A DNA stretch of 64,000 nucleotides, taken from assembly GCA_965235115.1 (NCBI GenBank), contig OZ249451.1, positions 4,526,001 to 4,590,000 on the forward strand, read 5' to 3'. This document shows, one piece after another, positions 2,176 through 63,983 of this stretch. Under the pieces are notes generated by a model. The model did not search any database, was not told where the DNA came from, and saw only the letters and a list, made by a program, of their open reading frames with translations. Origin of the DNA: Laetmonice hystrix. Its lineage: Eukaryota. Position numbers and translations under genes: made by a program. The stretch's first letter is position 1; each line of letters starts with the position of its first letter.

Positions 2176-2523
2176 GTAAATATCAGCTTCGGTTAGCATC
2201 AAGGCGTTGGTCGGGAACCTAGGAACAGTGGAGTGTGGGCTGGGCACCACTAAGTAAAACTATACGTATGTACATTGTCCTGCGAAAACGGAACCTCGTC
2301 CGATACTGGGAAGGCTAGGCCTATACGGCCAGTACGCACACTGTGAATGACCGCAAGAAACACACCAGTCCTGTCTTTAAAAAAACGGATTAAAATTATC
2401 GCTGGTGGCGCCGCCTGGCGAGAAATGACTTTTTAGATTAAATTAACTCTTTAAATTTTCACTTTAAAGGCTTTTTCTGAGTTTCACACAACCCCTTAAA
2501 TAACGAACTGTGTGATATTTCAG

Positions 2524-33961: not shown

Positions 33962-34462
33962 CCATAGTTTGACAAGATGTGGTTACTGTCTCGGCACGTT
34001 CACTGATGTCGAGAATTTCTTTTGAAGTTGGTCGATTCACACCATTACGGGTGGGACTATTTCTCTGTGATCTTTAGTGGGCGATAATGGAGGACATTCA
34101 GTTCATTATCCAGGGCAGTTAGACGGAACGAATTGTGTACTTCGCCCGAGTCACCTCACTCAGGTTCAACTTCTTGTTTCGCAAACACTTGTACTTTAAA
34201 ATGCTTTCCTGTAATACTATCAGGGTATCAGTAGATTTTCGAGTCAAGAACCCCCAAAGAATTTATTGAAGATAATTTGGTTGAAAAAATGCCATTGGGG
34301 AGGTCTAGGCCTACAAAACTATCTGGGTTAGTTATTCATGTACGTTTTTCTCAACACTTGAAAACTAGAGTATGCTGAAGGTATCATAGGACTCAGGGAA
34401 GACAAAGAGAGAGACAAACTTGTCCCTCAATTTGTGAAAACTTTTACCAACTGACTCCGATT

Positions 34463-34950: not shown

Positions 34951-36670
34951 TTTTTTTTATTTTTTTATTCAATTTGTTATACTGGCCTCTTGTCGGCACA
35001 CGCCGGTTTTCATCTAGAAGCCAGTTTACAACACCGTCCATAGACGACATAAACAACAGTCATACAAACACAACAGAATGATGTTGATGAAAATTATAGG
35101 AACCACTTATACAAACCTTCACAGTAGTTAGAGGTTTGGTCGGGGGGGGGGGTCTGGGCACACAATAGTTAACTGTACAGGATTAGGTAGGGTGATACAG
35201 ACTAAGCTGTAACGTTAGAAACAATAGAATTAGACAACCACTTCTTCTGAATTGCTTTAAAGGACAAAAACGGGTCTATTTTCCTTATTTCAGCCGGTAA
35301 GCAGTTCCATTCATTTGCCCCCGCATATTGTACACTCCTTTTATAGGCCTCACAATTTTGCGTGTTTATTTTAAAAATTGGTGCATCCCGGGCCCTAGTT
35401 GCAACTCTGGATTGGTCAATTAACGATAGATCACTTTTCTTTTTATACATATAATTGAGCATGTGGGTCTTCCTCCTGTTGACAAGAGTGGCTACTTTGG
35501 CTTTCCTATGGATTTCATCTGTTGAGGTACGCGAATGGACACTTAGACATAGTTTTAGACATCTATTTTGAAGTCTTTGTAGTTTATCTAGGTTTGCAGT
35601 GGTTGATTTGAAATATATCACGTCTGCATAATCAAAATATGGCAATATCATTGTTTTGTACACAGTTAAAGCAGCATTTTCTGTCAGATATTTCCTAATT
35701 TTACTTAGAACGTAGGCTTTGTGGGCTATTGTCTTTACCATCGACGAAACATGATTGCTAAAAGTAAGAGTATTGTCTAAGATAACACCTAGGTACTTAT
35801 AGGTTGGCACCATTTGTAATATGCTTTCGTTAATAGACAGTTCTATTTTGCCTAGTTTTTTAGGGCTTTTCTAGTGCCAAATGCCATAGTTTTAGTCTTA
35901 TTAACATTAATGGTTAGGGCATTGCTGGCACACCATTGAGAAAACTTGTCTAGTGAATTTTGCAGACCTTTCAGCGCCACATCATTCGAGCCATCACTAC
36001 ATGAAATAGCAGTGTCATCTGCATATAAGAATAGCGGGGACTCGCCTATGGCCCCTTGTACATCATTCACATACACCAGGAAGAAAAGGGGTCCTAGAAT
36101 GGACCCCTGCGGGACACCGCACTCGACATTTAAAAGTGTTGAAGTCCGGCCATTTACTTTTGTTCTCTGCTTTCTGTTAGCCAAGTAGCTAGTAAACCAT
36201 TTAAGGTTTGTGCTGCGCAACCCCATATGCTCTAGTTTACTGCATAAAATTCTATGATTCACTGTGTCAAAGGCTTTTTTTTAGATCGATAAACACTGCG
36301 ACAGTAGTTTTCTTGTTATTGATTGAATCAAAGATGCTGTTAGTTAGGTCAGCTATAGTGTTAATAGTAGAATGATTCGGGCGAAAACCTCCTTGAACCG
36401 CGCTTAGCAAGCCATTGGCTTCAAAGAAATTCATTATATTGGAGTGGACAATTTTCTCTAGCAACTTTCCTGGTAGGGGGAGTAACGATATTGGTCTATA
36501 ATTTCCTACATCTTCTCTGTCGCCTCCCTTGAACACTGGAATTATTGTAGCTCTTTTCCATGCGTCCGGGAAGATACCAGTACGCAGCGAGGTATTAAAG
36601 ATGTGGGACAGTTGGGGGATAAGTGCTAGTAAAGCATCCTTCAGTACTCTGGCAGATAGGTGATCAATAC
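34951..36670 (-). mobile_element. 5'-truncated CR1/L2-group non-LTR retrotransposon (RT domain, C-terminus, 3' UTR, A-rich tail)
   Basis: Motifs NYRPISLL, QGGFRPNHST, FIDLKK/AFDTVNH, GVPQGSILGPLFF, LYADDT and YKYLGVILD. Tail gaataaaaaaataaaaaaaa. CATAG TSD at 34946-34950 and 36671-36675. Two frameshifts in A-runs. Confidence 0.95.
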
Positions 36671-37592
36671 CATAGTAAAATATTGTGTGAATCTATACCA
36701 GGATTGCCGACCCTAATCCTGCACCGACTGATCATAGTAAAATATTGTGTGAATCTATACCAGGATTGCTGACCCTAACCCTGCACTGACTGATCGTAGT
36801 AAAAGATTGTGTGAATCTATACAAGGATTGCCGACCCTAACCCTGCACCGACTGATCGTAGTAAAAGATTGTGTGAATCTATACCAGGATTGCTGACCCT
36901 AATCCTGCACCGACTGATCGTAGTAAAAGATTGTGTGAATCTATACAAGGATTGCCGACCCTAATCCTGCACCGACTGATCGTAGTAAAAGATTGTGTGA
37001 ATCTATACCAGGATTGCTGACCCTAATCCTGCACCGACTGATCGTAGTAAAAGATTGTGTGAATCTATACAAGGATTGCCGACCCTAACCCTGCACCGAC
37101 TGATCGTAGTAAAAGATTGTGTGAATCTATACCAGGATTGCTGACCCTAATCCTGCACCGACTGATCGTAGTAAAAGATTGTGTGAATCTATACAAGGAT
37201 TGCCGACCCTAATCCTGCACCGACTGATCGTAGTAAAAGATTGTGTGAATCTATACCAGGATTGCCGATCCTAACCCTGCACCGACTGATCGTAGTAAAA
37301 GATTGTGTGAATCTATACAAGGATTGCCGACCCTAATCCTGCACTGACTGATCGTAGTAAAAGATTGTGTGAATCTATACAAGGATTGCCGACCCTAACC
37401 CTGCACCGACTGATCGTAGTAAAAGATTGTGTGAATCTATACAAGGATTGCCGACCCTAACCCTGCACCGACTGATCGTAGTAAAAGATTTTGTGAATCT
37501 ATACCAGGATTGCCGACCCTAACCCTGCACCGACTGATCGTAGTAAAAGATTGTGTGAATCTATACCAGGATTGTCGACCCTAACCCTGCAC
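36671..37592. repeat. Right arm of the 62-bp satellite, about 15 copies
   Basis: 62-nt period resumes in register after the LINE. Confidence 0.95.
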
Positions 37593-49393: not shown

Positions 49394-49460
49394 ATGAAGG
49401 TCGTAGTTCGCGGCGCATGCGCGCTGGTCGCTGTATTATTACTTTATGTCGGATACGGAG
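49394..49460 (+). CDS. Multi-WAP gene exon: signal peptide MKVVVRGACALVAVLLLYVGYG
   Basis: Basic N-terminus, hydrophobic core, donor GAG|gtaggt in phase 1. Confidence 0.85.
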
Positions 49461-52400
49461 GTAGGTTCAGCATCAGGTCCAATAATTCTCGAGTTATTGA
49501 ACAGTGAGCACTGTAGTTCTATAAATGACTTTTAGTTTATCTGAAAGGCAACAACAAACATGTGTCTTATTATAATAATGTATTATAACCACTTAATTGA
49601 GATTATAAGACTATAGCAACCCTTTTAAACCTCATTGTCACGGGGGTTCCTCGTGGAGTTTTTCACTGAAACTGCCAGCGGATTTACAATTTTGCTCTCT
49701 TCTTTCTATTTCAGACGCGCAAATAGGTAAGACCCATACTTTTTCCTTTTGAAATAATTTGTATCCATCATTTATTGAAGCTTACTGTCATAAGACCGCG
49801 TTCTAGTGAGTCGCTGTAAAGCGGCCGTCGGGTCCTAAAACTAGGACCTCCCACCCGTGCTACGATTTCGCTCTATTTCAGATGTAGACCTCGGCCGGCG
49901 GACCACTATAGAAAATCATCACTACAGAAAATCATACAGGCCGGGGTTAAGTTTATAACACATACCAAGATCTTACTGTGGGAATACGTCAGGCCGGGGT
50001 TAAGTTTATAACATATACCGAGATCTTACTGTGGGAATATACGTCAGGCCGGGGTTAAGTTTATAACATATACCAAGATCTTATTGTGGGAATACGTCAG
50101 GCCGGGGTTAAGTTTATAACATATACCAAGATCTTACCGTGGGAATACGTCAGGCCGGGGTTAAGTTTATAACATATACCGAGATCTTACTGTGGGAATA
50201 CGTCAGGCCGGGGTTAAGTTTATAACACATACCAAGATCTTACTGTGGGAATACGTCAGGCCAGGGTTAAGTTTATAACACATACCAAGATCTTATTGTG
50301 GGAATACGTCAGGCCAGGGTTAAGTTTATAACATATACCAAGATCTTACTGTGGGAATACGTCAGGCCGGGGTTAAGTTTATAACATATACCAAGATCTT
50401 ACTGTGGGAATACGTCAGGCCGGGGTTAAGTTTATAACATATACCAAGATCTTACTGTGGGAATACGTCAGGCCAGGGTTAAGTTTATAACATATACCAA
50501 GATCTTACTGTGGGAATACGTCAGGCCGGGGTTAAGTTTATAACATATACCAAGATCTTACTGTGGGAATACGTCAGGCCGGGGTTAAGTTTATAACATA
50601 TACCAAGATCTTACTGTGGGAATACGTCAGGCCGGGGTTAAGTTTATAACACATACCAAGATCTTACTGTGGGAATACGTCAGGCCGGGGTTAAGTTTAT
50701 AACACATACCAAGATCTTACTGTGGGAATACGTCAGGCCGGGGTTAAGTTTATAACATATACCAAGATCTTACTGTGGGAATACGTCAGGCCAGGGTTAA
50801 GTTTATAACATATACCAAGATCTTACTGTGGGAATACGTCAGGCCAGGGTTAAGTTTATAACATATACCAAGATCTTACTGTGGGAATACGTCAGGCCGG
50901 GGTTAAGTTTATAACGTATACCAAGATCTTACTGTGGGAATACGCCAGGCCGGGGTTAAGTTTATACCAAGATCTCACTGTGGGAATACGTCAGGCCGGG
51001 GTTAAGTTTATAACATATACCAAGATCTTACTGTGGGAATACGTTACGACGATCGCGGCACAACTTTCACTCTGATCGTAACATCAATAAAATTCAACTT
51101 TCACATAAACTTAATAAGGTCCGATTATGAGATACTATTCATAAGAAAAGTTTATGATAACTCCATTATAGCTATCAACTATAATTCCCCCAGGTCCGTA
51201 CACAACTCCTGCAGTTCCCGGACGAGACAATTGCTCAATCTCTAACACGGTCCGAACAATCACCAAATGTGGCGACCCTTGCATCCAGGACTCCAGCTGC
51301 CCCAGCAACTTCCGGTGTTGTCGAATACCCGGATGTGGGCTAGTCTGCACTGACACCCAGAGTAAGGCGGTGTGTTTCGGATGGCCTTTAATGCTAATTT
51401 CCACTCCTCCTCAACTAGCAAAACCTGCAACTACACTGATGAGAAAAAACTGAAGAGTGTAGACTTTGGCCTTTAGAAATCTAGACTCGCAATTCCTACT
51501 TAAACTAGCGTCAAGTATGCCTGTAGCCACCCATTTAGGCCTAGCCAAATACTTTTTTAGACATAATTCATGACTGGTAGGCTTAGTTTAAAACAAAGAA
51601 AAGTTTCTCTTGGCCTCTCTCCCTTGCCGCCTTGCAACAAAGAATATCTTTTACATGTCTCAACTGTAGGCCTAGACTTCGCGTTACTTTCCGTCCTACC
51701 TAATACATCATTCAATTTCAGGTTTATCTCTGGCTGCTACACCCACTGATCACTCACAGACTAGAGAGGAACAATGACCGTTACTTTTACCGTTAAATGT
51801 TTCTTACTGTGACGCGTTGAATTGTTACGTTTACCGTATGATTTCATTCCAGGTGCTCAGCTGCTCAAACAAACTGCTCAAGTTGGATTACATGTGAATT
51901 TGAGTTGATTGACGCGACAAAGACACTGTATGATGACAGTAATAATAATCAACATTCAAACTGCATAATGTATTTCATTTCTTGTTGTTTTTTAAGTTAC
52001 AGTCAATGACAAAGTTTGGGGGACGATACAGCCACACAGGACTCGCTTTTTACCAGCTTTATAGCCTCTGTTTTTTCATATTTTCATATGAAGGCATATA
52101 TCATTGAATTATTGTTTGATATTGGAGGACCCCAAAATAATTATTGTGGAAGGTAACCGTATTACGTTCTTGAAGTCTTCTCAGAGACGCAGCAGGTGTT
52201 TTTTGGTCCGATCAGCTATCGGAGACTATAGCTGCAAGGTCAAACGAAACTGAATGGTACTTGGCATACCAGGTACCAGATGGGTAGGTTTCTAGGCCTA
52301 GTAATGGTACTTGGCATACCAGGTACCAGATGGGTAGGTTTCTAGGCCTAGCGGTCAACGTTCTCACAAGTATAGCCATTGGTGTATTGTCTAATATACT

Positions 52401-55400
52401 AACTCTAATCTGTATTCTTTTCCATAAATTAACACCACCACTTAACCACTGCTAACACCACCACCTTTTCGACGGGATCGCCCCCTGGCGACAGACGGTG
52501 CAAACCAGTGTCCTTTGACCTTCAGCGGTCCTTGTGGGTTACCATGTGCCCTTGGGTTCAGTGTTTGCCCGGACGGTGGAGTCTGCTGCTACCGCCCTGA
52601 CTGCGGCTATAGCTCCTGCACCAAGGCCGATGGTAAATGACTATTTCACAAAGTTTTATTGACACTGACATCTGCGATAAGCGATTTAATCTGCGATTTA
52701 TTGTGTTGAGATGGTCATAACCTCTCTTTCCACGCATGACCCCGCGCACATGGGGTCACAATGCACCGCGCCAGCTCGGCATGACAGTTATCGGAAAATC
52801 AAGATCAGCAGGAAATGTATATTTTATTGACATGTATTATCCTTCAACGTAACGTATAATTAATTGAAAAAGGACTTAATTGGAAATTATACTTAATTAA
52901 TTATTTAATTATATTATAATTATAAAAGTACGAGCCCCATTTAAAGTGCAACAATGTTCATTAAAACACTACAGTTTCCGCCTTTGCGCAGTAGGTCCTA
53001 TTGACGTGCAGTCACCTGAACTGAACCCACCCTACGAACGACCCTAATTACCACAGCTTCCTAACAATAACGTTCTCACCCTGTCAGTGGCCAGAGACGC
53101 TGCCCCGTGTCCAGCCGGGGTTACCGGCCCATGCGGAGCCACCTGTGGTCCCCGTCAGTTATGTGAGCCGGGAGCGACCTGCTGCTTCCGGTTTGAATGC
53201 GGTTATAGTTCATGCATAACGTCAAACGGTAAATGGTGCCATTACTAATTATCACAGACTGAACACGTGTGGGTGAGTGTGTGTGGGTGTGACACATATA
53301 AGTGTGTTTCTATTTCCTTACCTCTAACACTAACCAATACTGGCAAACGATCATTTTTTATTGCAAGTTTGTGAATGCGAAATAAGCATGTATAAGCCTA
53401 TCATTTAACACTCAAATGGAACCCTGTTTGGGTAATTCAGGACGAGTAGTGTTGATGCCTGAGTATTGTAGATAATGGCAGGACTTCCCCTCTGTTGGAA
53501 TATGTATGTGTATATAGCTGAAGAGCGCCACCTTGAGCATTTATAAGGACTGAAATAGATTATGAGAACAGCCCAGTTTAGGCTTTTTCTGTCATATCAA
53601 ACAGGGTCCCATCATCCCACCCAAAACAGTCATTGCACGCATCACAATTTACTAATAACCTTTACTGCACAAATTCCCCTTTCACCGTTCTGCAAGTCTT
53701 ATGCATGTTTACCCTTCCAGTAAAGTTTATGAGACCACCCTTCCATTGTACCAAGATACTTCCAAAGTTTATGAGACCACCCTTCCATTGTACCAAGATA
53801 CTTCCAAAGTTTATGAGACCACCCTTCCATTGTACCAATATACTTCCAAAGTTTATGAGACCACCCTTGTATCATACCAAGATACTGCCGAAGTTTATGA
53901 GACCACCCCTCTATTGTACGGATTACATACATTAACCCCTCACTGACCATGCTGCGGTTTGCAGTCTTACCATCAGGTAATTTACAGTCTATCCGTCACG
54001 GAGTCTGCCCCATTCTCCCCAGTGGCAGCCCGCTACTACCACGTCAGATAACCTGCCTTGTCGACGGTGATTGCCCGGGGGTATTCAAATGTTGCCCTCG
54101 ACTCGGGTGTAGGACCTTTATAAAGTTATGTATATATCCACAAGGATTTACCACAGCCCGTTCCTATACAACACCAGCTTCAACCACAACAACCGGTAAC
54201 TTACATTTAATATCAACTTTTAAAATGTCCTATAGTCGATGAAATTCGAGAACAATGGAAGATATTGAAGTACAAAATTGAATGTGAGGTACACATGTAC
54301 TTCTGATAAATAGGTATCCTGTGGTTTTTATAGACCTATTTTCTTTCTCCTTTTTTGGAAATAAATTTTGAGTCACGCCATCTTCAAAGTGCGCGTTCAT
54401 GTATTACGGAACAGGAACGTTGCTAGGGCCCCTGCATAAACCAGGGGAATGCCCTGTTACACCAACAAGGGCACGGACTTCTTGTGGGAATCCCTGCTAT
54501 TTTGACGTATATTGTCCTGGTCAGCTGAAGTGCTGCCCTCTACCGGGATGCGGAAGTAAGGGTGTCGTCTGCCTAAGCCCGCGCTTCCAGACCACTGAAC
54601 CGCACATACACACCTTTCCCGTTGTAACCCCTCCAACTATATATCACCCTACCACACAGGCGCCCGGTAATCAAGTCATTTCATATTCTACCATTGCTAT
54701 CCCGATTTGAAGATCATAATCGATTACGTTACTCTTCAATATACACAATTAGGTTCATTTAGAGATATGGTCATGAGTAATTCAACGTTTCCCAAAGTTC
54801 TCTATTCTCTACTTGAACACCTCCCCCCTTTATTCTGCCTTTTACGGTATCAGTATTTTCACACTCTGTGCACATTAACACTCGCATGACATATTATCAA
54901 GGATGGCCCAGTGGTTATGCTACATTAGATTATAAAATAATAATTTTCTTTCACACATTTTGGTATTATTATGTATAAGACACCCCATGTGACTCCCCGA
55001 CGCTTTTATAGGTGTTGATCTGCCTTACATGAAGCAGGGTATTTGCGTAGAGCACCCTCACATAAAGCAGAAGAGTTGCCACCCAACATGCTTCAATGAC
55101 TACGAATGTCCAAACATACTCAAGTGCTGCCCCATACCGGCGTGCGGAGGAATTAGTACTGTATGCATAACGCCGATCTTTTTGCACGGTCCCTTTTTGC
55201 ATAAGAAAGGTAAAGAATCTACGATGTCTTGTTATGTTTTTGAACTTTTGTCTTAAAAACGTTTCTGGGGTATTCATAAGGAACCAGTTATTACCTGCGT
55301 GGTTCAGAAATATCGCTGCGCCATCCTTGCTTTTGATGCATGATGTTTCCTTTTGTATTTAACCGGATACACAGTTTGGTCGCATCTTAAAACGGTGGCT

Positions 55401-58400
55401 GTTTGTACTGAGTCGCCATCTGGTATGGACAGAGAGTGTGAAGTGAGGTGTTCTTCCAGTGATGAGTGTCAGGAATCAGAAATCTGTTGCATGCTTCCCT
55501 CCTGTGGTTCAACGGGAACGACCTGCATGAAACGCCAGGGTAATTTTAGTTAAGTAGAGCAACACTAGGTGGCATAAAGTGTGTTGATAAATTGTATTAA
55601 AGGGAGACTCGTAACATTAGTCGATAGGTGGCGCTTCTGCATGGTGATGCATTTAATTGGTTTAACACCCTCCTCCGAGACATACATGTATATAATACTA
55701 TATATGTCCTTAAAGGTACAGATTGAGCGAGGCCAAATATGCATGCAAATATGAATTTACCATCCCTTATTTGGTAATTACCTTACAGCGCCACCTGTCG
55801 GCTCACTGATTGCCTTTTTCTCGCCCTTCAGCCTAACGATTAGACTAACAGAAGTTTAGATGTAGCCGACATTTATGAGAGAGGGAGAGAGAGATAGAGA
55901 GACAGAGAGAGAGAGAGAGAAAGAGATAGACAGAGGCACAGAGAGACAGAGACAGAGAGAGAGATAACTCATGCTTGCTAACACCAACCTCTAACACACG
56001 CCGTTTCGTACGTAAAGCCACAGACACCACCCCGCCCGTCAACTGCCCCGAGGTGACCACGTTTAGCAGTACGTCATGCGCAGAGATGGTTACCTGCACA
56101 CGTGACGCAGACTGTCCTGACGAACGCCAGTGTTGCTTCACGTTGTGCGGCGCGCGCTGCATCCCGCCACGGAGTCAGGATGACGTACCAGGAGACGCTG
56201 GAGGCACGTAATATGTTGTACTTTAGATATCTGTCTACGTCATATATGGTAGGCTCTAGATCTATGCTGTGTTCCGTTCTCGTAGTCAGTCGCGGTGCTT
56301 CTTTAAATAAACTCGTCCATGATTTATCCGGATCATAAATACTTTTATAAGGCCCGGGACAACTAAAGGGGGTGGGGGTGTGGGTGGGGTGGGGTGGGGG
56401 GTGGGGGTAGAAGAGAGTAGCGCCACTCGTCATTTACAGAGTTTGGTGGCCCAGTGGGTGAAAGACACCTGCCTTGAGAGAGCTAAGAGTTGCTGGCTTT
56501 CAGGTTAAATTCTCACTTTTTTCAATGAACCCCCCCCCCTCCGGGCCAGCGATTTGTGTGCGGGTTTTTCTCGAGAATCTTTTGGGCAAATCACGGGGCA
56601 ATTAGCCAATCAGAGCTCTGACGTCATACTACAACGCTAATACTAACCCTAACCCTCACTTTAACTCTAATCCTCACTTTAACCCTAATCCTCACTTTAA
56701 CCCTAATCCTCAATCATATTTGTTCATACAGATGTGTCCGTCAACTATATTAGAGATAAGCATAGATTTGTATTCATTCGACAGAGTCTAAACAGGCGCT
56801 ACGTCATGCAGAAGGAGCTGACGGCACTTACCCATTGTTCCCAGAAGAGTTAGGGGATAGAAATCTTACACTTGTGCCTTCCCATAATCATTAGATACCG
56901 ACGGGATGTCACCTATGGAACCATGACCCCTGCACTCACAACATGCATGTCAATATTCCAGGACGGCGGCCAGCCCGGAGCCGGCCTGGTGCCTGTCCCA
57001 ATTACAATCTGCCGGGAAACTGCCGGTTGTACTGTCTCCGGGATGACCAGTGCGACCATGGTTCTAGGTGTTGTTTCACGGGATGCGGGAAACGCTGCCT
57101 CAGAGTCGTACGAACCATTCCCCCAGGCATGCTCCATTTCGTATACTCGAAAGAATCTTTGCGTTTTTTCCATTTTATACCCGAGCCGTAGTGCAACATC
57201 GAACTAACAGAGGACATTGCCTTCTACATTGCTTTTTCCCCGCAGACCAACCTAAATTAATGGTCATTATTATAGAGACTAAAATGCGTCACAGAGGGAA
57301 AATAATTTTAGTTACAATTTTTAGAATTTAGAGTATTTTTTTATGACAAGTCAAACAGACAACCCCGTCATATAACGAAAGCCAATTCAGCTGAAAATAT
57401 TTGCAATGCTGTTCTAACGCTGCTAACTCTGCAGTGGCTGTGAGCCGGCCAGGTCTGTGCCCAAACATCCACCTCCCAGGACAGTGTCAGAAGTTCTGTA
57501 AACAAGATGGACAGTGCTCACTGAACCGGAAGTGCTGCTCCACTGGTTGCGGAAGGCGCTGTCTCAGCGTAACAGGAAACAATACTATTGACCCCGGAAA
57601 TGAACTCCCAGGCAGGCGCTCTCCTAACATTGTTTCCGATTCATCATAAATTAAAACTTTCAAATGTCTTTTTTTTATCTGCCATCCCATATAAACCATC
57701 ATGTTATTTATCTTGATGAAGATATTGGCAGATATTTGCATGGCCTTTAGCGTAATACCGCCAAAATATTGTTTCCTTTCTTATCTGATATTGACGATTT
57801 TTTTAGTATTATATTCTATGACACTATCTTTGATAGGGGGTTCTTTGCAATTTGCTTCAACCATAGTTGTTTCTTGACTTTCTAGGAAGCTCAACAGCTA
57901 ACTGATGCCTGATTGCTTATTTTTCTAAGAGTTTCCGCCGTATAGTTATTCTGTTTTCAGTGACATAGATTTGTTTCAAGTTGTATCAGTTGTGTACAGC
58001 TATTACTAATGATCAACACGATACCCTATCCTAAATACGGTAGAGTCTCGTAATCTTCTACAAACGCTTTATTCATTGGCTCTGATTGCCAGCTTCCATA
58101 GTATCGCTTACAGTTCAACCTTTTTAAACCCATGTTGTCATTTTTCCCTTGCTTCCAGTTTCTCATGTTTTATTGCAAACTGATACCTCCAGTCGTTTCA
58201 AACATAACATTATAGTATCTTTTTCAGTTTGGCTAAACAACCGTTTATAGAAGACAGCCCTGCTTCTAGTAGTTTTGGGCCAGACATACATTAAACATGC
58301 CTTCAAGGGAGACCGGGGTGTTTTTAAGTTGAAATTGAGTTTTTATATGAAAGGCGTTTATTTCAGTTTTGAATTCACGAAAGACAGTATTATTTGGATA

Positions 58401-61400
58401 ATAATGGAGTAAGTACAATATTATAGGCCGATATAGTGTGAAGATTTGAAAATTTGACAATTCTCTTCGTGATTATCGACATCTCCGGCACCCCTGTCTC
58501 CAACCAATCATCAAATTGACGTTCCTAGAACTGTCATCACTTTTACCTTTCAGCTAAGAATGGAATATGTCCAAACATTGTCCAGTTCAGACCTAATGGC
58601 GTGTGTCCTGGGATCTCCTGCAGCAAGGATGACGATTGTTTTGGTGAACAGAAATGTTGTGTTTCCGGATGTGGACAAAGAACGATCTGTACTTCTCCCG
58701 TCTTGGCGACAGGTGGATTGAACAATTCCTAGCACACTCGATGGCTCGGAACCGCATTGGGACAATGGGAAATTATACAGATGCTAATCTCCGCTAGAAT
58801 TTCCTGTAGATGCACGCCAAGATAAGATGATGCATGATTGAAAATGGCGAATTGTGGATGGTATGGGACTAAAAAAAGGAATTGATATGTACTTAACACG
58901 AATAGCAAAAATACGTCTCCCATTGTCCTAGGTACAGCTTCTCGGATGTGCACATTCTTCCTAGAGTTGTGGGCCTTCAGTTTTATTTGCTTGCCCATGG
59001 CACCTTGAGTCACAATGTAGACAGCCTATTCTGCGCAGTTCTGCATGCTTCCTGTGTAGGCGCAGTGATATAGCTAGGACAACTGTAGTATTGCAGGCAC
59101 ATTATCCACGAAATCTACCACCCGCATCGCAAACAACCTCCTAGCCAACCCAATGTCTACACTCATTTTCTAGCACACACATATTTTGTAGCAACATCGG
59201 CAGTTTTTTCTCCCCCACTTGTTTGTCCTGCCTTTAAGTTTGATTTTACTCCCAGTGACGTACTCCCTAAGGCACCCCATGCTTTGTTTTGCAGCACATT
59301 TAGTGATTTAACCCAGCAGGTCGTGAGGCCAACATGCCCGCCTCACAAGTATGATTTGAGTTCTCCAGCGCACAGTTAAATGTCGGTCTAGAACCGTCGA
59401 CCGAAGGTCTAAGTCGACCCATCTGTGTTTCATCACGCCTTGTCTGTCGTAGATTAAAGTCATTTGATGTCAATCATACATCATGTTTGTTTTGCAGTCA
59501 TACTGCCCTAATTTTCTTTTCAGAGAGCATATAGAATATATCTACTTGTACTTTCAATGTTACAAATATTTTACATAAACTTATTGAAGCTTTAAAAACA
59601 TAGTTGACTTTAAAAATAACAGATACGCTCTAATAAATGACATCTACACAACATTTCTGGCATTATCTGTAAACCTAAATCGTATCTTCTAACTTTCCAT
59701 TATCTGTTCATCATTTGGATAATTTAGTTGCCCTTTTACTCAAGTTTTACTGTTTATTCTACTTTTCAGGCGAAAGATGCGGTGTAAGTAATATTTTTAT
59801 TTTATTATATTATATATGTATAGCAAGAGACGTGAATTTCAAGTATTACAACAACTAGTTAAGTGACTTCATTATTAATCCTGTCATGCAGGTTTGCTAT
59901 CGTGAAATATTTACAATAAAACCCCACCCCCTTTGGCTGCAAGCCTTGCTTGATCTTCAAGAAATCAAGTACATATAGTATGGAATAGAAACGGATAAGT
60001 CATGAATAAGATGTAATAACAGGGATAAGGAGATGGTTTTACGAATAGAAGATGGCCAAGCCTGACACCCAGGGGGTTATGGGGGTTGCAATACTCTTTT
60101 GAAAGTGATTTTTTGCTAGTCAAATTCCCCCACCCGCAGGATCCGCGCTGCGGCGCCTGGCAAAAGGCAATAAGTTTGCATACGGGGTTCCTCTTCAAAC
60201 ACAACAACTCCCTTCTCAGATGAAAGATTCTGGTGGGATAAAAATTCTTTATGAGATCTGTAATAATCAGTCAAATATATTATATACATGTATATATATT
60301 TATATACTGTATGTATATGTTTATCCGATAGCCTATATTCTGCCCACCAAGCTACAGATGTGAAAGGGCACCTGGCTGCACCTCCTCACTCTGTGCCGGA
60401 CGCTGCGTCCGAGGTTAGTACTTATCGTAGAGTACTTCAGTTAGCCAAGATTGTACAACCTGTAATTAACCAGTTATATACACTCAAACCTTTAATATAC
60501 TAGTGTCAAACCCGCTGCATATATATATGCATGCCTAATGCAGCTTTCCGTCCCAGCCAATAAGATACTTTTCAATATTTTAGCAGAAGATAAGCATGGG
60601 TATTTAAATCGCAGAAGTCATTATATAGGTTTGCTAAAATTCAGTGTCTTCTGCCAATAAATGTTGCTGGAATACGTATCGTAAACCTACTATGTCCCAT
60701 GATGATGGTAACTTGATAAACTGGACTTTCAGGTGGCATTTCCCTGCCAGGCACACCTTTCCCACCCATCCCCCCAGTACAACCTCGCCCGGGCTTATCC
60801 TGCAGCGTAAGTAACCTTCAAATATACCCACCTTTTATTCGTACATTAAAATATGACTAAAACGTTTTTAAACGTTCTTTACAAGCTGGGTGCCAACATG
60901 TTGATTAAGAATCGGTTTGATTGGCTGTTTATCACAGACCACCGTGTGTGTGGCAGGATTCGAGTGTAAGCTCAAGGACGTGGTTTGCATAACAGCCCCA
61001 TGTAACCCTGTGCCTACTTGCGTTCCAACAAGTAAGAAGCAGTTTTTCTACCCAGATTTGTATTACATATTTATTATATTAGATATATTTTGTTATATAT
61101 TTTTTAATTATATTTCTATATTGTATATATTAGATGGTAGAGATAATCATCATCTGTATGCTTGTCCAGGAACATTGATAGTAAACTTATAATGTCACTA
61201 TTCACCTCATCCTTTTAGATAACGCCTGTGACGTAAGTATTCCAGTCTTCTTACACTTCATTCTGGTTCTACTAAAATAGATATGGAATAGTTATGACAT
61301 TTCAGATGTAAAACAAGTTTTTTCAGCAGATCGACAAAAAAATTGCTCTATCAACTCATTTAAAAAGTCAAAAAGCACAAAGGAAAGCATTTCTGTTCGC

Positions 61401-63278
61401 TTTGGAAATGAGAAAAATAAAAGGCATCGTCCGCATGGCATAGAAAGCATATCTCTTGGTTCCTATGTCCTTCATGTGCCTGGACGCAATTCTCCCAAAT
61501 TATAAGTTTGGCCTAGAGTATGAGAAGATGTTTCATCCTTACCTTTGTGCAGAGTAGGCGGTATGCCATGCCCCCCGGATTACCGCTGTCGGGTCGGCCC
61601 GGAGCGGCTCCAATGATTATGATTATGATTACGATTATGATTATGATTATGATTTGTACCTTTGTGCAGAGTATGCCATGCCCCCCGGAGTACCGTTGTC
61701 AGGTCGGTCCGGAGCGGCTCCGATGCGTTCCCATCTCAGCAGGTAAGATTCTACTAAACGCCGCTAGAGGGCCAAATATACCAGCCTCTTCCTGTTTCCT
61801 CTTGTTTACGTCTTCAGCATATCTCTCAAAATGTGTCACTGTCAATACTTTTGAAAAAAGAAAGAAAGAAAGAAAGAAAGTGGAAAGGCATAATACCAAT
61901 GTTAGATGGTTGTGAGATTTTTTAGTTGTTTAGAAGTACACTTAGTTCTTGGTCGAAGCAAAGTTCCAATGCTTAACGCTCCTCAACATTGTTATTATGG
62001 TTCTCAAGTGCCGTCCCAAAGTACGAAGTGAAGATTTTAGGAGGGCATACTCTATAATCAATAGACATCCGGGTATCCTCCGGGATACCCGGATCAGATA
62101 ACAACATCTACATCGATGTCTTGTTAAGGTGCTAAAATTGGCTCGTTTTTAAAATGACAAAATGGGGAGATAATTATTACATAATAGTTCGATATTACAG
62201 AATGAACCTCAGCAAGACCGACTTCATGCTAGTATTTATATCGTTACAAGAAGGTGTCTGTGTCGTTTATTTGTCTCATAAGGCGGTTTTTCAGGTATAA
62301 TAGAGGGGAGGGTGCTACATACAATACCGGCTCCGATTGTGTCCCAATATTTGAATTGAAAAAAAAATGCGTGAAGCCAAAAACTATTAACATGCGGCCA
62401 AGGTCAAGATCACGTCGCCTTTTGCATCTTGTTTCCTAATCTCTTGTCCTCTTCCTTTCTAATTTTAGGTCGATATACTATTTTTCTAGGGTTACTTAGC
62501 ATTTTTAGATACCGATTATCTTCCGATATAGCTTGTAAACCATTACTTCGCAGTAGATTGCCACGTCTGACATCTTTATTGTCGGTTTGCTGACTAGAAT
62601 CAGGGTTTGAAGGCCTGATGTCCAGTCAGGTTTTGAAGGCCAGGGACTCGTTTCACTAACACTGTACGAGCTCGTATATGGCCTTATAGCTCGTAAACAA
62701 GAAAAAACTCCTACATTTTGCTATTATGATCTATAGATAATACGAGTTGTAACATATGAGTGTTTAGTGAAACGGTCCCCAGGCTGATGTGTTCAGTGAA
62801 ACGGTCCCCAGGCTGATGTCCGGTTGTTGAGTAGTCCAAGTAATCCGATTGGTCCTCGTTAATTACTAGACATCCGCTGCAGCTTGTCGCCCGATCCCGG
62901 ACCTTGCAGGGGCAGCATCATCTCCTACTTCTACGACTCCGACTCTGGCAGTTGTCGGACATTTAATTACGGTGGCTGTGGCGGAAACAATAACAGATTT
63001 GAAACGCAAAGTCGTTGTAGTGAAGTCTGTCAAAGCCAGCCAGATTCCGGCGGTGGCGGTGAGACCTTTACTTCCCTCGTGAATGCAGTTACCCCCGTTT
63101 ATAACCCCTTCAACCCCACCCCATGCATGTGGGAGCCCAACCCCTGACCCCTCAGGCCATATCACCATCCTTGCATGATTGGAACTGGAACGCGGAACCT
63201 CGGTTTGGGGTTCATTCAGTTCATTTTGGTAGTTTTCATGTATTTTATTTTTTCTTTTCCTTTTCAGCATTTTTATAG
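49394..63278 (+). CDS. Secreted multi-domain protease-inhibitor-like protein: signal peptide + 11 WAP + 3 follistatin-N-like modules + Kunitz; 21 coding exons, about 867 aa
   Basis: Exons 49394-49460, 49715-49726, 51194-51361, 52495-52632, 53088-53228, 53965-54195, 54415-54666, 55012-55209, 55375-55539, 56024-56203, 56962-57126, 57435-57611, 58554-58712, 59770-59783, 60332-60413, 60733-60806, 60938-61031, 61219-61232, 61670-61742, 62870-63058 and 63268-63278 join in phase (sum 2604 nt) with no internal stop. Confidence 0.85.
49715..49726 (+). CDS. Multi-WAP gene 12-nt microexon (DAQI), likely carrying the signal-cleavage site
   Basis: Acceptor tctttctatttcag| and donor TAG|gtaaga; phase 1 to 1. 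Confidence 0.7.
   Translation, partial: TRK
49937..51043. repeat. 53-bp intronic minisatellite, about 21 copies
   Basis: Unit tcaggccggggttaagtttataacatataccaagatcttactgtgggaatacg. Confidence 0.97.
51194..51361 (+). CDS. Multi-WAP gene exon: WAP1
   Basis: NC...KCGDPCIQDSSCPSNFRCCRIPGCGLVC has 8 Cys; ccccag| and A|gtaagg. Confidence 0.9.
52253..52351. repeat. Tandem duplication, 2 x about 50 bp
   Basis: aatggtacttggcataccaggtaccagatgggtaggtttctaggcctag occurs twice. Confidence 0.9.
52495..52632 (+). CDS. Multi-WAP gene exon: WAP2
   Basis: QCPLTFSGPCGLPCALGFSVCPDGGVCCYRPDCGYSSC has 8 Cys; donor G|gtaaat. Confidence 0.85.
53088..53228 (+). CDS. Multi-WAP gene exon: WAP3
   Basis: PCPAGVTGPCGATCGPRQLCEPGATCCFRFECGYSSC has 8 Cys; ctgtcag| and G|gtaaat. 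Confidence 0.9.
53719..53910. repeat. 42-bp intronic tandem repeat, about 4.5 copies
   Basis: Unit ccaaagtttatgagaccacccttccattgtaccaagatactt. Confidence 0.9.
53965..54195 (+). CDS. Multi-WAP gene exon: WAP4 (7 Cys) plus Thr-rich linker
   Basis: RHGVCP...ITCLVDGDCPGVFKCCPRLGCRTFIKLC; tttgcag| and G|gtaact. Confidence 0.85.
54415..54666 (+). CDS. Multi-WAP gene exon: WAP5 plus Thr/Pro linker
   Basis: KPGECP...SCGNPCYFDVYCPGQLKCCPLPGCGSKGVVC; an alternative in-phase acceptor exists at 54427. Confidence 0.9.
55012..55209 (+). CDS. Multi-WAP gene exon: WAP6
   Basis: KQGIC...SCHPTCFNDYECPNILKCCPIPACGGISTVC; cttttatag| and AAG|gtaaag. Confidence 0.9.
55375..55539 (+). CDS. Multi-WAP gene exon: WAP7
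   Basis: VC...ECEVRCSSSDECQESEICCMLPSCGSTGTTC has 8 Cys; donor AGG|gtaatt. Confidence 0.88.
55876..55965. repeat. (GA)n-rich microsatellite
   Basis: Seen directly; similar tracts at about 16600-16650 and 24230-24290. Confidence 0.9.
56024..56203 (+). CDS. Multi-WAP gene exon: WAP8 (putative GC donor)
   Basis: NCP...SCAEMVTCTRDADCPDERQCCFTLCGARC; best phase-1 donor GAG|gcacgt, with a weak GT alternative at 56173. Confidence 0.85.
56640..56712. repeat. (TAACCC)-like 18-bp microrepeat, possibly within a non-autonomous Helitron-like insert
   Basis: taaccctaaccctcactt taactctaatcctcactt taaccctaatcctcactt; the element assignment is inference only. Confidence 0.6.
56962..57126 (+). CDS. Multi-WAP gene exon: WAP9 (putative GC donor)
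   Basis: RPGACPNYNLPGNCRLYCLRDDQCDHGSRCCFTGCGKRC; tattccag| and CAG|gcatgc. Confidence 0.88.
57435..57611 (+). CDS. Multi-WAP gene exon: WAP10 (putative GC donor)
   Basis: RPGLCPNIHLPGQCQKFCKQDGQCSLNRKCCSTGCGRRC; ctctgcag| and CAG|gcaggc. Confidence 0.88.
58554..58712 (+). CDS. Multi-WAP gene exon: WAP11
   Basis: KNGICP...VCPGISCSKDDDCFGEQKCCVSGCGQRTIC; ttttacctttcag| and CAG|gtggat. Confidence 0.9.
59770..60413 (+). CDS. Multi-WAP gene: 14-nt microexon 59770-59783 (GERCG) plus exon 60332-60413 = Cys module 1
   Basis: cttttcag|...|gtaagt, then tccgatag|...G|gttagt. Product GERCG/PIFCPPSYRCERAPGCTSSLCAGRCVR has 6 Cys. Confidence 0.78.
60733..61031 (+). CDS. Multi-WAP gene: Pro-rich exon 60733-60806 plus exon 60938-61031 = Cys module 2
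   Basis: GGISLPGTPFPPIPPVQPRPGLSCS/TTVCVAGFECKLKDVVCITAPCNPVPTC; canonical donors gtaagt and gtaaga. Confidence 0.85.
61219..61742 (+). CDS. Multi-WAP gene: 14-nt microexon 61219-61232 (NNACD) plus exon 61670-61742 = Cys module 3 (FOLN spacing)
   Basis: C-x4-C-x5-C-x8-C in NNACD/SMPCPPEYRCQVGPERLRCV; ccttttag|...|gtaagt and tttgtgcag|...G|gtaaga. Confidence 0.82.
61541..61615 (+). pseudogene. Pseudo-exon: disabled partial duplicate of exon 61670-61742
   Basis: Same acceptor acctttgtgcag, an insertion after the acceptor, CGA TGC changed to CAA TGA, and no donor; separated from the intact copy by a (GATTAT)n tract. Confidence 0.8.
62870..63058 (+). CDS. Multi-WAP gene exon: BPTI/Kunitz domain
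   Basis: CSLSPDPGPCRGSIISYFYDSDSGSCRTFNYGGCGGNNNRFETQSRCSEVC has all six Cys and the FxYGGCxGNxNxF motif; attactag| and G|gtgaga. Confidence 0.95.
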
Positions 63279-63983
63279 ATTAGAACCAAGAAGCCCGACC
63301 TTCCTTTTTGATTTTATTCTCATTTTCCCATCCAGATATTAAGATTTTATTGAATGCACCTGTCAATATTGCCAGCATGTCTCTCTCCACAGAAGGGTCG
63401 TTGATTGGTTAAGGTTTGCATGCATGGTTTCAGTATACACAAACATGGACTTGCTTCTTCGTCGAGTAGCATTTTCAGGTTGTTAATCGTACAACCCCCT
63501 AAAGTTTAACCAAAAATTACACGCCAAAAAGAATAATCGAAATCGAAAATCTGAGAATGTTACGCGACAAAACAGGCTGTCTTCCTGGCTAAATCAAGTC
63601 CTGCTTGTCGTATATGTTTATTCAGTTTTTATTTTTATTTTTGTATATTTCATGTTGTCGTTTCATTGAGCTGTTTCACTTTACAATTTTCCTGTTGTAT
63701 CTACAACTATCGACATAATAACTAACAATAGCTCTGGGCCAACTTTTCAATGGCTTTCTTATAGCTAGTAGCAACTTCCGACTACGAGTACTACAAGTAC
63801 GAGTTTCATGTACTGCTTACCGTTTGCTAGCCGTCATGTTATCTTTTGTCTTCTGAACACATGACGGATAACGTGAAACTAACCGCAGTGTTGTAAACAT
63901 TTGTATTTCAACATAATCCATGCAAGATAAGGTAGTGCATAACCAATACTTAGCATAATCCATAAACCATCAGTACAAATAAA
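63268..63983 (+). other. Putative terminal exon (AFL-stop at 63276-63278) and 3' UTR with AATAAA at 63978-63983
   Basis: Long pyrimidine tract ttttttcttttccttttcag| at 63267. Alternatives are read-through to the stop at 63147 or further exons beyond the window. Confidence 0.5.

What the first reader, a model, noticed from the sequence alone, without database searches (positions are those of the whole stretch)
49394..63278. Modular secreted protein: 11 WAP + 3 follistatin-N-like + Kunitz
The reconstructed 867-aa protein strings eleven divergent WAP domains, one per phase-1 exon, with Thr/Pro-rich linkers. WAP-Kunitz fusions are known (EPPIN, WFDC8, WFIKKN, snake ku-wap-fusin) but with one to three WAPs, and I do not recall this architecture. 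The order WAP, follistatin-like, Kunitz echoes WFIKKN. It is a candidate broad-spectrum protease inhibitor, antimicrobial or mucus/matrix protein, and the best candidate for an undescribed system here.
Basis: partly seen in the sequence, partly recalled or inferred. Interest (0 to 1): 0.8.

Follow-up and report, generated by a model that had tools for sequence, protein, structure and literature searches.

The report
Long secreted WAP–Kunitz mosaic gene
This worm gene really does string eleven WAP modules, three small EGF-like modules and a Kunitz module, but it most likely runs on past the window's end, and similar many-WAP-plus-Kunitz proteins are already in public databases, so it is a new member of a known kind.

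Summary
The exons are real.

- **WAP exons.** There are eleven cysteine-rich exons on the + strand, all phase 1. Eight pass Pfam's WAP cut-off and one is marginal. Two (W2, W3) are WAP-like only by cysteine spacing.
- **"Follistatin-N-like" pieces.** No FOLN match was found. Each is built from a micro-exon plus a main exon. The nearest solved relative is the two-disulfide module of avian eggshell-membrane protein (CREMP), a truncated EGF.
- **Gene end.** The model stops only because the window stops. The Kunitz exon has a strong phase-1 donor. In the 15 kb beyond it, on the same strand and phase, lie nine more Kunitz exons, two more WAP exons and three more small modules. No second signal-peptide exon was found. 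The open frame is then about 1,568 codons: 13 WAP, 6 small modules, 10 Kunitz. The gene's end is unresolved.
- **Expression.** No RNA data were found, so the joins, three GC donors included, are inferred.
- **Novelty.** The architecture is not new. Turtles have predicted proteins with 11 WAP and 3 Kunitz domains, and a limpet shell-matrix protein has 11 WAP domains.
- **Likely role.** A secreted matrix or mucus protein whose Kunitz heads inhibit trypsin-like proteases. The short-loop WAPs W1–W11 look antibacterial or structural instead.

The scan holds a second, unfollowed first-reader note of this same stretch.

The parts
49394..49460 (+). Exon 1: start codon and signal peptide (22 residues plus a split codon); donor GAG|GTAGGT, phase 1
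   Evidence: It is the only ATG exon with a strongly hydrophobic core and a good phase-1 donor between 49.3 and 78.7 kb.
51194..51361 (+). W1, a WAP exon of phase 1-1 (alternative acceptor at 51215)
   Evidence: Pfam WAP 24.6 bits; independent HMM E 1.8e-6; splice sites.
52495..52632 (+). W2, a divergent WAP-like exon with 8 Cys
   Evidence: No Pfam hit. Cys spacing aligns with the other WAPs. Leave-out HMM E 0.26.
53088..53228 (+). W3, a divergent WAP-like exon with 8 Cys
   Evidence: No Pfam hit. BLAST reaches WAP domains of database proteins, 46% over 41 aa. Leave-out HMM E 0.095.
53965..54195 (+). W4, a WAP exon with 7 Cys (second Cys lost) and a Thr-rich tail
   Evidence: Pfam WAP 27.4 bits; Cys spacing and tail.
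54445..54666 (+). W5, a WAP exon with a 31-residue Thr/Pro-rich tail
   Evidence: Pfam WAP 30.8 bits.
55012..55209 (+). W6, a WAP exon
   Evidence: Pfam WAP 26.5 bits.
55375..55539 (+). W7, a WAP exon, marginal by HMM
   Evidence: Pfam 15.3 bits, below the cut-off; independent HMM E 8e-4; 8 Cys in register.
56018..56203 (+). W8, a WAP exon; GC donor at 56204, or a GT donor after 56173 in the same phase
   Evidence: Pfam 34.2 bits; donors; bases confirmed in DNA contigs.
56962..57126 (+). W9, a WAP exon; the only in-phase donor is CAG|GCATGC
   Evidence: Pfam 39 bits. The one haplotype variant inside it is at a third codon position (His to Gln).
57435..57611 (+). W10, a WAP exon; the only in-phase donor is CAG|GCAGGC
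   Evidence: Pfam 42 bits. It aligns to SLPI domain 2 with a 5-residue gap in the inhibitory loop, and aligns to omwaprin with only a one-residue gap before the second Cys and none in the C2-C3 loop.
58554..58712 (+). W11, a WAP exon
   Evidence: Pfam 37.4 bits; two synonymous haplotype variants.
59770..59783 (+). fA micro-exon of 14 nt, phase 1 to 0, carrying the first Cys; donor GTAAGT
60332..60413 (+). fA main exon, phase 0 to 1, 5 Cys; with its micro-exon it makes a 6-Cys EGF-like module
60778..60806 (+). fB micro-exon of 29 nt (alternative acceptors at 60751 and 60733), Pro-rich plus the first Cys
60938..61031 (+). fB main exon of 94 nt, 5 Cys
   Evidence: 47-50% identity to repeated modules of a gastropod WAP protein, P0136.
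61219..61232 (+). fC micro-exon of 14 nt
61553..61660 (+). Decayed duplicate of the fC main exon (7-nt insertion, stop), running into an (ATGATT)n microsatellite; not part of the coding model
61670..61742 (+). fC main exon; with its micro-exon it makes a 4-Cys module spaced C-x4-C-x5-C-x8-C, the CREMP / N-terminal-EGF spacing
62870..63058 (+). K1, a Kunitz exon with P1 Arg; strong phase-1 donor GCG|GTGAGA
   Evidence: Pfam Kunitz 72.3 bits.
63059..63147 (+). The only AATAAA is at 63978.

Best explanation
The stretch is the 5' two-thirds of one long gene for a secreted, disulfide-rich mosaic protein of an annelid-type worm.

Shown:
- One signal-peptide exon is followed by symmetric phase-1 exons, each holding one module.
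- The small EGF-like modules are each split into a micro-exon (phase 1 to 0, ending Cys-x|GTAAGT) and a main exon (phase 0 to 1).

Inferred:
- The Kunitz exon K1 splices from its donor at 63058 to a second Kunitz exon 1.1 kb on, just beyond the window.
- The gene runs at least to G000:C21:4604914. That gives SP, W x11, f x3, K x2, f, K x4, f, W, K, f, W, K x3. This is about 1,568 codons with no stop yet: 13 WAP, 6 small modules and 10 Kunitz.

Proposed working:
- The protein is secreted into an extracellular layer such as mucus, cuticle or tube lining.
- The Kunitz heads with Arg or Lys at P1 (K1, K2, K5, K6, K9) block trypsin-like serine proteases by the standard substrate-like mechanism. The heads with Gly, Asp, Thr or Gln at P1 have other targets or none.
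- W12 and W13 keep an elafin-length loop and may inhibit elastase-like enzymes.
- W1-W11 have the short loop of the antibacterial, non-inhibitory snake waprins. They more likely act as cationic antibacterial or structural beads.
- The Thr/Pro-rich stretches after W4 and W5 and the two- or three-disulfide small modules act as spacers.
For: **Exons and frame.**

**Domain identities.**

**Continuation beyond the window.**
- Nine further Kunitz exons, two WAP exons and three small-module pairs lie on the same strand. All fit phase 1 (the small modules as 1 to 0 plus 0 to 1 pairs) and all have AG/GT borders.
- The K1 donor G|GTGAGA matches those of K4 and K5.
- No credible second signal-peptide exon lies between 63 and 79 kb.
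- The same odd two-exon build of the small module occurs on both sides of K1. All six have a micro-exon ending Cys-x|GTAAGT. In the four introns tested, such sites were found in 4 of 4, against 0.005 expected in shuffles.

**Intactness.**
- The nine tabulated Kunitz exons keep 6 Cys, seven of them at exactly 8-15-7-12-3, at only 31-56% mutual identity. The tenth, a copy of K8, shows the same pattern.
- 12 of 13 WAP exons keep 8 Cys.
- Haplotype variants are rarer in exons (3 in 687 nt, all at third codon positions, 2 synonymous) than in introns (22 in 2,214 nt).

**Function leads.**
- P1 residues.
- Loop lengths and alignments to SLPI, elafin, omwaprin and nawaprin.
- WAP and Kunitz proteins are recurrent parts of spiralian secreted matrices (PMC3374290; bioRxiv 10.64898/2026.03.09.710468).
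Against: - No RNA run holds the stretch. No splice junction, the K1-K2 join and the three GC donors included, is observed.
- An in-frame stop (63145) and an AATAAA (63978) allow a short 866-aa form.
- No annotated protein of this genome and no annelid relative appeared among the 120 listed hits of the database search, so there is no comparative check of the gene's limits.
- The gene's 3' end is not found. Sushi exons and a 14th WAP exon follow on the same strand.
- Inhibition and antibacterial action are inferred from sequence only.
Confidence: 0.6

Rival explanations
1. Transcription ends after the K1 exon, giving the 866-aa protein with a 28-residue tail. The Kunitz/WAP exons from 64157 on belong to a neighbouring paralogous gene, or are reached only in a minor isoform.
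For: - An in-frame stop lies at 63145 and the only AATAAA at 63978, 180 nt before the K2 acceptor.
- Tandem inhibitor genes are common. This genome has several other mosaic inhibitor loci.
- With the tail's one Cys, the mature short form has an even number of Cys despite the 7-Cys W4. This is numerology, not proof.
Against: - K2 starts in phase 1 and needs an upstream exon. No convincing signal-peptide exon lies between K1 and K2 or anywhere up to K9.
- The K1 donor is as strong as the donors of the internal Kunitz exons.
- The same two-exon small module is interleaved on both sides of K1.
Confidence: 0.25
2. The protein is mainly a structural, cross-linkable matrix component, like the WAP proteins of mollusc shell matrix or avian CREMP fibres, and not an inhibitor. 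The disulfide-rich beads give toughness and protease resistance, and the unpaired Cys of W4 allows intermolecular links.
For: - W1-W11 lack the long inhibitory loop.
- The small modules are nearest to CREMP, a fibre protein.
- A limpet 11-WAP protein is a major shell-matrix constituent.
- W4 has 7 Cys.
- Barnacle and gastropod proteins alternate WAP with the same small module.
Against: - The ten Kunitz domains keep six cysteines and a canonical or near-canonical scaffold, and five have a basic P1. This is the hallmark of working inhibitors.
- The worm makes no shell.
- Matrix and inhibitor roles do not exclude each other.
Confidence: 0.3
3. Part of the array is not used. W9 and W10 (GC donors only), and perhaps W2, W3 and W4, are skipped or decaying exons, or the whole locus is silent in the tissues sampled.
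For: - Three consecutive GC donors with imperfect consensus.
- W2 and W3 are not recognised by HMMs.
- W4 lost a Cys.
- A decayed copy of the fC exon lies at 61553-61660.
- No RNA holder was found.
- All these exons are symmetric, so skipping keeps the frame.
Against: - W9 and W10 are the best-scoring WAPs of the array (39 and 42 bits).
- They have no stops and a full set of 8 Cys.
- The single variant in W9 is at a third codon position.
- The GC bases are real.
Confidence: 0.12

Closest known systems
Predicted 'papilin-like' / WFDC8-like multi-WAP plus Kunitz proteins of reptiles, birds and fish (turtle cluster P0009, e.g. XP_043382890.1; Pogona vitticeps P0079; quail P0008)
   Same: Secreted strings of WAP domains with Kunitz domains. 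P0009 has 11 WAP and 3 Kunitz, and P0079 has 7 WAP and 7 Kunitz, by Pfam.
   Different: These are vertebrate proteins with only 40-57% identity per domain, so they probably expanded independently. They have no small EGF-like modules. All are uncharacterised computer predictions, and the name 'papilin' is automatic.
Lottia gigantea shell-matrix proteins Lotgi1|239125 (2 + 9 WAP) and Lotgi1|201804 (8 WAP)
   Same: Lophotrochozoan secreted proteins of about 85-103 kDa, with 8-11 WAP domains interrupted by small Cys-rich inhibitor-type modules. They were found as proteins by mass spectrometry (PMC3374290).
   Different: Their spacers are antistasin domains, and no Kunitz is reported. No antistasin match lies in our locus. 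I could not fetch their sequences to align them.
Eppin, WFDC8 and WFIKKN1/2 (vertebrate WAP-Kunitz fusions)
   Same: A WAP and a Kunitz domain in one secreted chain.
   Different: They carry one to three WAPs. WFIKKN also needs follistatin/Kazal, Ig and NTR domains, and no FOLN, Kazal or NTR match is in the locus; Ig was not searched for.
[quoted passage not shown]
   Same: The small modules match it best among solved structures: E 4e-10 with the mixed profile and 0.0028 with the window's own four modules. fC has the same C-x4-C-x5-C-x8-C spacing, described as a truncated EGF with 1-3 and 2-4 disulfides.
   Different: Five of the six worm modules have six Cys, with an extra C-x4-C-x3-5-C tail. 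They are single spacers between inhibitor domains, not long tandem arrays.
Gastropod (Babylonia areolata XP_076445861.1, P0136) and barnacle (Pollicipes pollicipes 'balbiani ring protein 3-like', P0041 and P0191) WAP proteins
   Same: They alternate WAP domains with the same 6-Cys or 4-Cys small module.
   Different: They have no Kunitz domains and are uncharacterised.
Omwaprin and nawaprin (snake waprins) versus elafin and SLPI domain 2
   Same: W1-W11 share the short C2-C3 loop of the waprins. W12 and W13 share the near-full-length loop of elafin.
   Different: The waprins are single-domain venom proteins. That omwaprin is antibacterial and not inhibitory is from my own knowledge and was not tested here.

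Membership tests
WAP four-disulfide core (PF00095) | Score above the Pfam gathering cut-off (20.8 bits) | tested here: met
   Met by W1, W4, W5, W6, W8, W9, W10 and W11 (24.6-42 bits) and by W12-W14 beyond the window. W7 scores 15.3 bits, below the cut-off. W2 and W3 get no hit.
WAP four-disulfide core (PF00095) | Eight cysteines with a central CC, spaced C-xn-C-x3-9-C-x5-C-x5-CC-x3-5-C-x3-6-C | tested here: met
   All eleven exons align on seven invariant Cys columns. Only W4 lacks the second Cys.
Inhibitory WAP of the elafin/SLPI-D2 type | An 8-residue binding loop between the second and third Cys | tested here: not met
   W1-W11 have 3-5 residues there. W10 aligns to SLPI-D2 with a 5-residue gap in the loop. 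W12 and W13 (7 residues) align to elafin with one gap.
Kunitz/BPTI (PF00014) | Score above the cut-off and six Cys in the canonical spacing | tested here: met
   K1 scores 72.3 bits. K2-K8 and K9 score 64-75 bits. The tenth copy scores 67.6 bits in the genome search. All nine tabulated exons keep six Cys, seven at exactly 8-15-7-12-3 (K3 and K5 differ slightly), with P1 R, R, G, D, R, K, T, Q, R.
Follistatin N-terminal domain-like (FOLN, PF09289) | A match to the family profile | tested here: not met
   The spliced modules give no hit at E up to 10. No FOLN match in the locus appears in the six-frame genome search. Follistatin reaches only E 0.31 with the mixed profile and is absent with the window-only profile. 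The first three Cys do share the C-x4-C-x5-C spacing.
CREMP-type two-disulfide (truncated EGF) module | C-x4-C-x5-C-x8-C spacing and profile similarity to PDB 9pgb | tested here: inconclusive
   fC has exactly this spacing. PDB 9pgb is the best hit: E 0.0028 with the window-only profile and 4e-10 with gastropod and barnacle modules added. The other five modules have six Cys. No fold was computed.
WFIKKN | WAP, follistatin/Kazal, Ig, two Kunitz and an NTR domain in one chain | tested here: not met
   None of the 89 Kazal_2 matches, the 4 NTR matches or the single FOLN match in the genome lies in C21:4.575-4.630 Mb. Ig domains were not searched for.
Papilin | An ADAMTS-like N-terminal cassette with thrombospondin type-1 repeats, then Kunitz and Ig domains | not tested
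   Only WAP, Kunitz and, further on, Sushi were seen in the exons scanned. No search for TSP1 or PLAC was run. The name 'papilin-like' on database look-alikes is automatic.
Lustrin_cystein (PF14625) and Antistasin (PF02822) | A match to the family profile | tested here: not met
   The only trace is a sub-threshold Lustrin_cystein hit (15.8 bits against a 27-bit cut-off). No match of either family lies in the locus in the genome-wide searches.

The most novel reading that the evidence does not exclude
One transcript encodes all of it: at least 13 WAP, 10 Kunitz and 6 small modules, and perhaps the Sushi exons and 14th WAP further on. That would be over 23 inhibitor-type heads on one chain, more than in any WAP-Kunitz protein I found in the databases. 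The spacer would be a so far unannotated CREMP-like module family shared by annelids, gastropods and barnacles, whose first cysteine is always carried by its own 14-29-nt micro-exon.
Probability: 0.3. Interest if true: 0.45.

Novelty: new member of a known kind. Interest (0 to 1): 0.3.

Why it matters
It shows that the long WAP-plus-Kunitz strings that automatic annotation keeps mislabelling (as papilin, balbiani ring protein, notch and so on) also exist in annelids. It gives a worked exon map for one of them. It also flags a small disulfide module, nearest to the recently solved CREMP module, as a recurrent spacer in invertebrate WAP proteins. None of these proteins has been studied functionally, so a worm with a good genome could serve to test two things: whether the many heads inhibit different proteases, and whether the short-loop WAPs are antibacterial or structural. 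The general theme is known, so the gain is incremental.

Tried and rejected
- **RNA evidence.** Two searches for runs holding the stretch (57300-63300 and the exon-dense 53950-57650) returned only three DNA data sets of one sample. Laying them confirmed the bases, the GC donors included, but shows nothing about splicing.
- **An annotated protein of this genome, or an annelid relative.** I searched the 5.8-billion-protein collection with a long multi-WAP protein aligned to the window's WAP exons. The 120 listed hits held no own-genome entry and no annelid.
- **Full-length searches with the spliced protein.** Not run. The spliced sequence has no reference and I did not type it. Only modules of at most 42 residues were typed.
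- **FOLN, Lustrin_cystein, Antistasin, Kazal and NTR as identities for the small modules or other parts of the locus.** No match. The weak Lustrin_cystein hit is below threshold and was dropped.
- **A second signal-peptide exone downstream of K1.** Nothing convincing was found.
- **Literature.** I found no study of an annelid multi-WAP/Kunitz protein.
- **Structure prediction.** I ran none. The folds of WAP and Kunitz are not in doubt, and the small modules are too short for a telling fold search.
- **Sushi exons and gene end.** I did not resolve their exon structure or find the 3' end.


Full report
**Where and what.** The window is G000:C21:4526001-4590000 of a 627-Mb animal genome. Earlier notes of the scan call the animal a worm with giant cuticle collagens. 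All features below lie on the + strand.

**Checking the observation.** Stop-free, cysteine-rich frames and splice-site phases give one consistent model.
- Exon 1 (49394-49460) holds a start codon and a hydrophobic signal peptide. It ends in phase 1 at GAG|GTAGGT.
- Eleven exons follow, W1-W11 (51194-58712). Each is a multiple of three long and lies between phase-1 introns.
- Then come three small cysteine modules and one Kunitz exon (62870-63058).
- Reading on from the Kunitz exon to the stop at 63145 gives 866 codons.

How well the WAP exons are supported:
- Pfam puts W1, W4, W5, W6, W8, W9, W10 and W11 above the WAP cut-off. W7 is below it, and W2 and W3 get nothing.
- An HMM that I built from 400 WAP domains of database proteins, so independent of this locus, finds W1 and W4-W11 in a six-frame translation of 104 kb. 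It adds three WAP exons beyond the window, finds none on the minus strand and none elsewhere.
- W2 and W3 keep all eight cysteines in register. They score only marginally against a profile of the other WAPs (E 0.26 and 0.095).
- W3's best BLAST matches fall on WAP domains of other proteins.
- W4 has lost the second cysteine.
- Clearly Thr/Pro-rich tails follow only W4 and W5.
- Among the 22 WAP matches listed for the whole genome (a lower bound by the tool's note), 11 lie in this locus.

**The three GC donors.** W9 and W10 can be joined in frame only through CAG|GCATGC and CAG|GCAGGC. W8 has GAG|GCACGT, or a GT donor 30 nt earlier in the same phase. The same reader had noted this separately. 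DNA contigs of three runs of one sample show no variant at these bases, so they are not assembly errors. Their use remains unproven. Within 55900-58800 the second haplotype differs at 22 intronic places in 2,214 nt. It differs at only 3 exonic places in 687 nt, all at third codon positions and two of them synonymous. This is weak but consistent support that W9 and W11 are read in this frame.

**The small modules.** The main exons (60332-60413, 60938-61031, 61670-61742) start in phase 0 and end in phase 1. They cannot follow a phase-1 donor directly.
- Upstream of each lies a micro-exon of 14 or 29 nt. It has a pyrimidine-rich acceptor, a reading frame ending Cys-x, and the donor GTAAGT (59770-59783, 60778-60806, 61219-61232).
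- The micro-exon supplies the first cysteine, giving C-x4-C-x5-C...
- Such sites were found in 4 of the 4 introns tested. In 2,000 shuffles of those introns the mean was 0.005.
- The same signature led me to two more modules beyond the window.
- Spliced, the modules have six cysteines. fC has four, spaced C-x4-C-x5-C-x8-C.

What the modules are:
- Pfam gives no FOLN hit.
- The genome-wide six-frame searches for FOLN, Lustrin_cystein and Antistasin find nothing in the locus.
[quoted passage not shown] Small toxins and Notch EGF domains follow.
- With gastropod and barnacle modules added, that match is E 4e-10 and follistatin is at E 0.31.
- The CREMP paper describes this module as the first two disulfides of an EGF domain, with exactly that spacing.
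- So 'follistatin-N-like' is right as a cysteine pattern for the first three Cys. The better name is an EGF-like, CREMP-type module.
- The same module alternates with WAP domains in a gastropod protein (P0136) and in barnacle proteins (P0041, P0191).
- A decayed copy of the fC exon, frameshifted and running into an (ATGATT)n microsatellite, sits at 61553-61660.

**The gene does not stop at the window's end.** The K1 exon ends, ten residues after its last cysteine, at GCG|GTGAGA in phase 1. This is the same donor type as in the later Kunitz exons. I fetched the next 40 kb. On the same strand, with AG/GT borders and in phase 1, lie the following, in window-equivalent numbering:

| Exon | Position | Locus reference |
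|---|---|---|
| K2 | 64157-64324 | L001:157-324 |
| small module fE | 64519-64547 + 65477-65573 | |
| K3 | 66691-66867 | |
| K4 | 68890-69060 | |
| K5 | 69366-69548 | |
| K6 | 69916-70089 | |
| small module fD | 70615-70643 + 72197-72290 | |
| W12 | 72483-72620 | |
| K7 | 73546-73710 | |
| small module fF | 74205-74224 + 74900-74993 | |
| W13 | 75094-75231 | |
| K8 | 75571-75744 | |
| copy of K8 | 77143-77313 | |
| K9 | 78744-78914 | L003:4744-4914 |

That is about 1,568 codons with no stop.
- A scan for ATG exons with a hydrophobic core and a phase-1 donor recovers exon 1. It finds nothing convincing between K1 and K9.
- K2 starts in phase 1, so it cannot open a gene.
- The nine tabulated Kunitz exons are 31-56% identical to each other, yet all keep six cysteines, seven of them at exactly 8-15-7-12-3. 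The K8 copy shows the same pattern. They are old and maintained.
- Against the long form: there is a stop at 63145 and an AATAAA at 63978, so a short form may also exist.
- Further on come Sushi exons, in several near-identical copies, and a 14th WAP exon. I could not decide whether they belong to the gene, so the 3' end is open.

**No expression data.** Both searches for sequencing runs returned only DNA of one sample. Every junction is inferred.

**How it probably works.**
- Kunitz domains inhibit serine proteases in a substrate-like way, through the residue after the second cysteine (P1). This is established knowledge of the BPTI family.
- Here P1 is Arg in K1, K2, K5 and K9, and Lys in K6. 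It is Gly, Asp, Thr and Gln in K3, K4, K7 and K8. That means five trypsin-directed heads and four of other or no specificity.
- In elafin and SLPI domain 2 the inhibitory loop lies between the second and third cysteines. W10 aligns to SLPI domain 2 with a five-residue gap exactly there, and aligns to omwaprin with no gap in that loop.
- W1-W11 have 3-5 residues in this loop. W12 and W13 have 7 and align to elafin with one gap.
- From my own knowledge, not tested here, omwaprin and nawaprin are not protease inhibitors, and omwaprin is antibacterial.
- I therefore read W1-W11 as antibacterial or structural beads, W12 and W13 as possible elastase-type inhibitors, and the Kunitz block as the main inhibitory part.
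- The predicted mature protein is basic (pI about 8.3).
- WAP and Kunitz proteins are recurrent in spiralian secreted matrices. A place in mucus, cuticle or tube lining is likely but is inferred.

**Comparison with what is known.**
- A profile of the 14 WAP exons, searched against 1.84 billion representative proteins, gave 1,829 hits. Many have 10 to 48 WAP stretches. They come from a sponge, sea stars, a sea cucumber, bivalves, hemichordates, fish, sharks, frogs, turtles and birds.
- Sixteen of the best 150 also hold Kunitz domains. By Pfam, a turtle family has 11 WAP and 3 Kunitz, and a lizard protein has 7 WAP and 7 Kunitz. An abalone protein has 9 WAP, 3 Kunitz, 7 thyroglobulin-1 and a SEA domain.
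- A limpet shell-matrix protein with 2 + 9 WAP domains separated by antistasin domains was found by proteomics.
- All carry automatic, misleading names, and none has been characterised.
- This genome has other mosaic inhibitor loci, and the scan holds a note of another Kunitz/mucin/lustrin-type gene.
- WFIKKN membership fails, because no Kazal, NTR or FOLN lies in the locus.

**Verdict.** This is a real, intact, probably much longer mosaic gene. It is a new annelid member of a known, widespread but unstudied kind. The novelty claim and the gene's limits were not.

Noticed in passing
window 30100-34000: A tandem repeat of about 4 kb with a 51-nt unit and strong GC skew (-0.43). It stays open for up to 491 codons on the + strand (a 17-residue Thr/Pro/Lys-rich unit) and also on the - strand. 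Pfam gives only a spurious repeat-driven hit. It could be a minisatellite or a coding mucin-like repeat.
   Followed up: partly
window 35205-36692, - strand: Three adjoining open frames of 141-222 codons that look like a reverse transcriptase of a LINE-type element (a YADD-type motif is visible). Pfam on the 3' piece gave nothing.
   Followed up: partly
window 2500-4296, + strand: An open frame of 599 codons with no Pfam match.
   Followed up: partly
window 56203-57612: Three consecutive introns would need GC donors. The bases are confirmed in DNA contigs of the same sample, but no RNA is available to show use. The same reader noted this as a separate finding.
   Followed up: partly
L003:5588-8943, L002:390-6459, L004:4666-4878 (G000:C21:4605588-4624878): Sushi-domain exons on the same strand. 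Each holds only the C-terminal two-thirds of the domain. Several are near-identical copies and some look degenerate. A 14th WAP exon lies at L002:9683-9850. They may be the gene's tail or a neighbouring gene.
   Followed up: partly
G000:C3:30971151-31012983, - strand: About 30 Kunitz exons in 40 kb, followed by two WAP exons and an antistasin match. This is a second and even larger mosaic inhibitor locus.
   Followed up: no
G000:C21:12559304-12564975, - strand: One open frame of 1,335 codons holding at least 38 antistasin repeats, flanked by Kunitz exons.
   Followed up: no
G000:C3:38170590-38184331, - strand: A cluster with WAP, Kunitz, Lustrin_cystein and antistasin matches, probably another mosaic inhibitor gene.
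   Followed up: no
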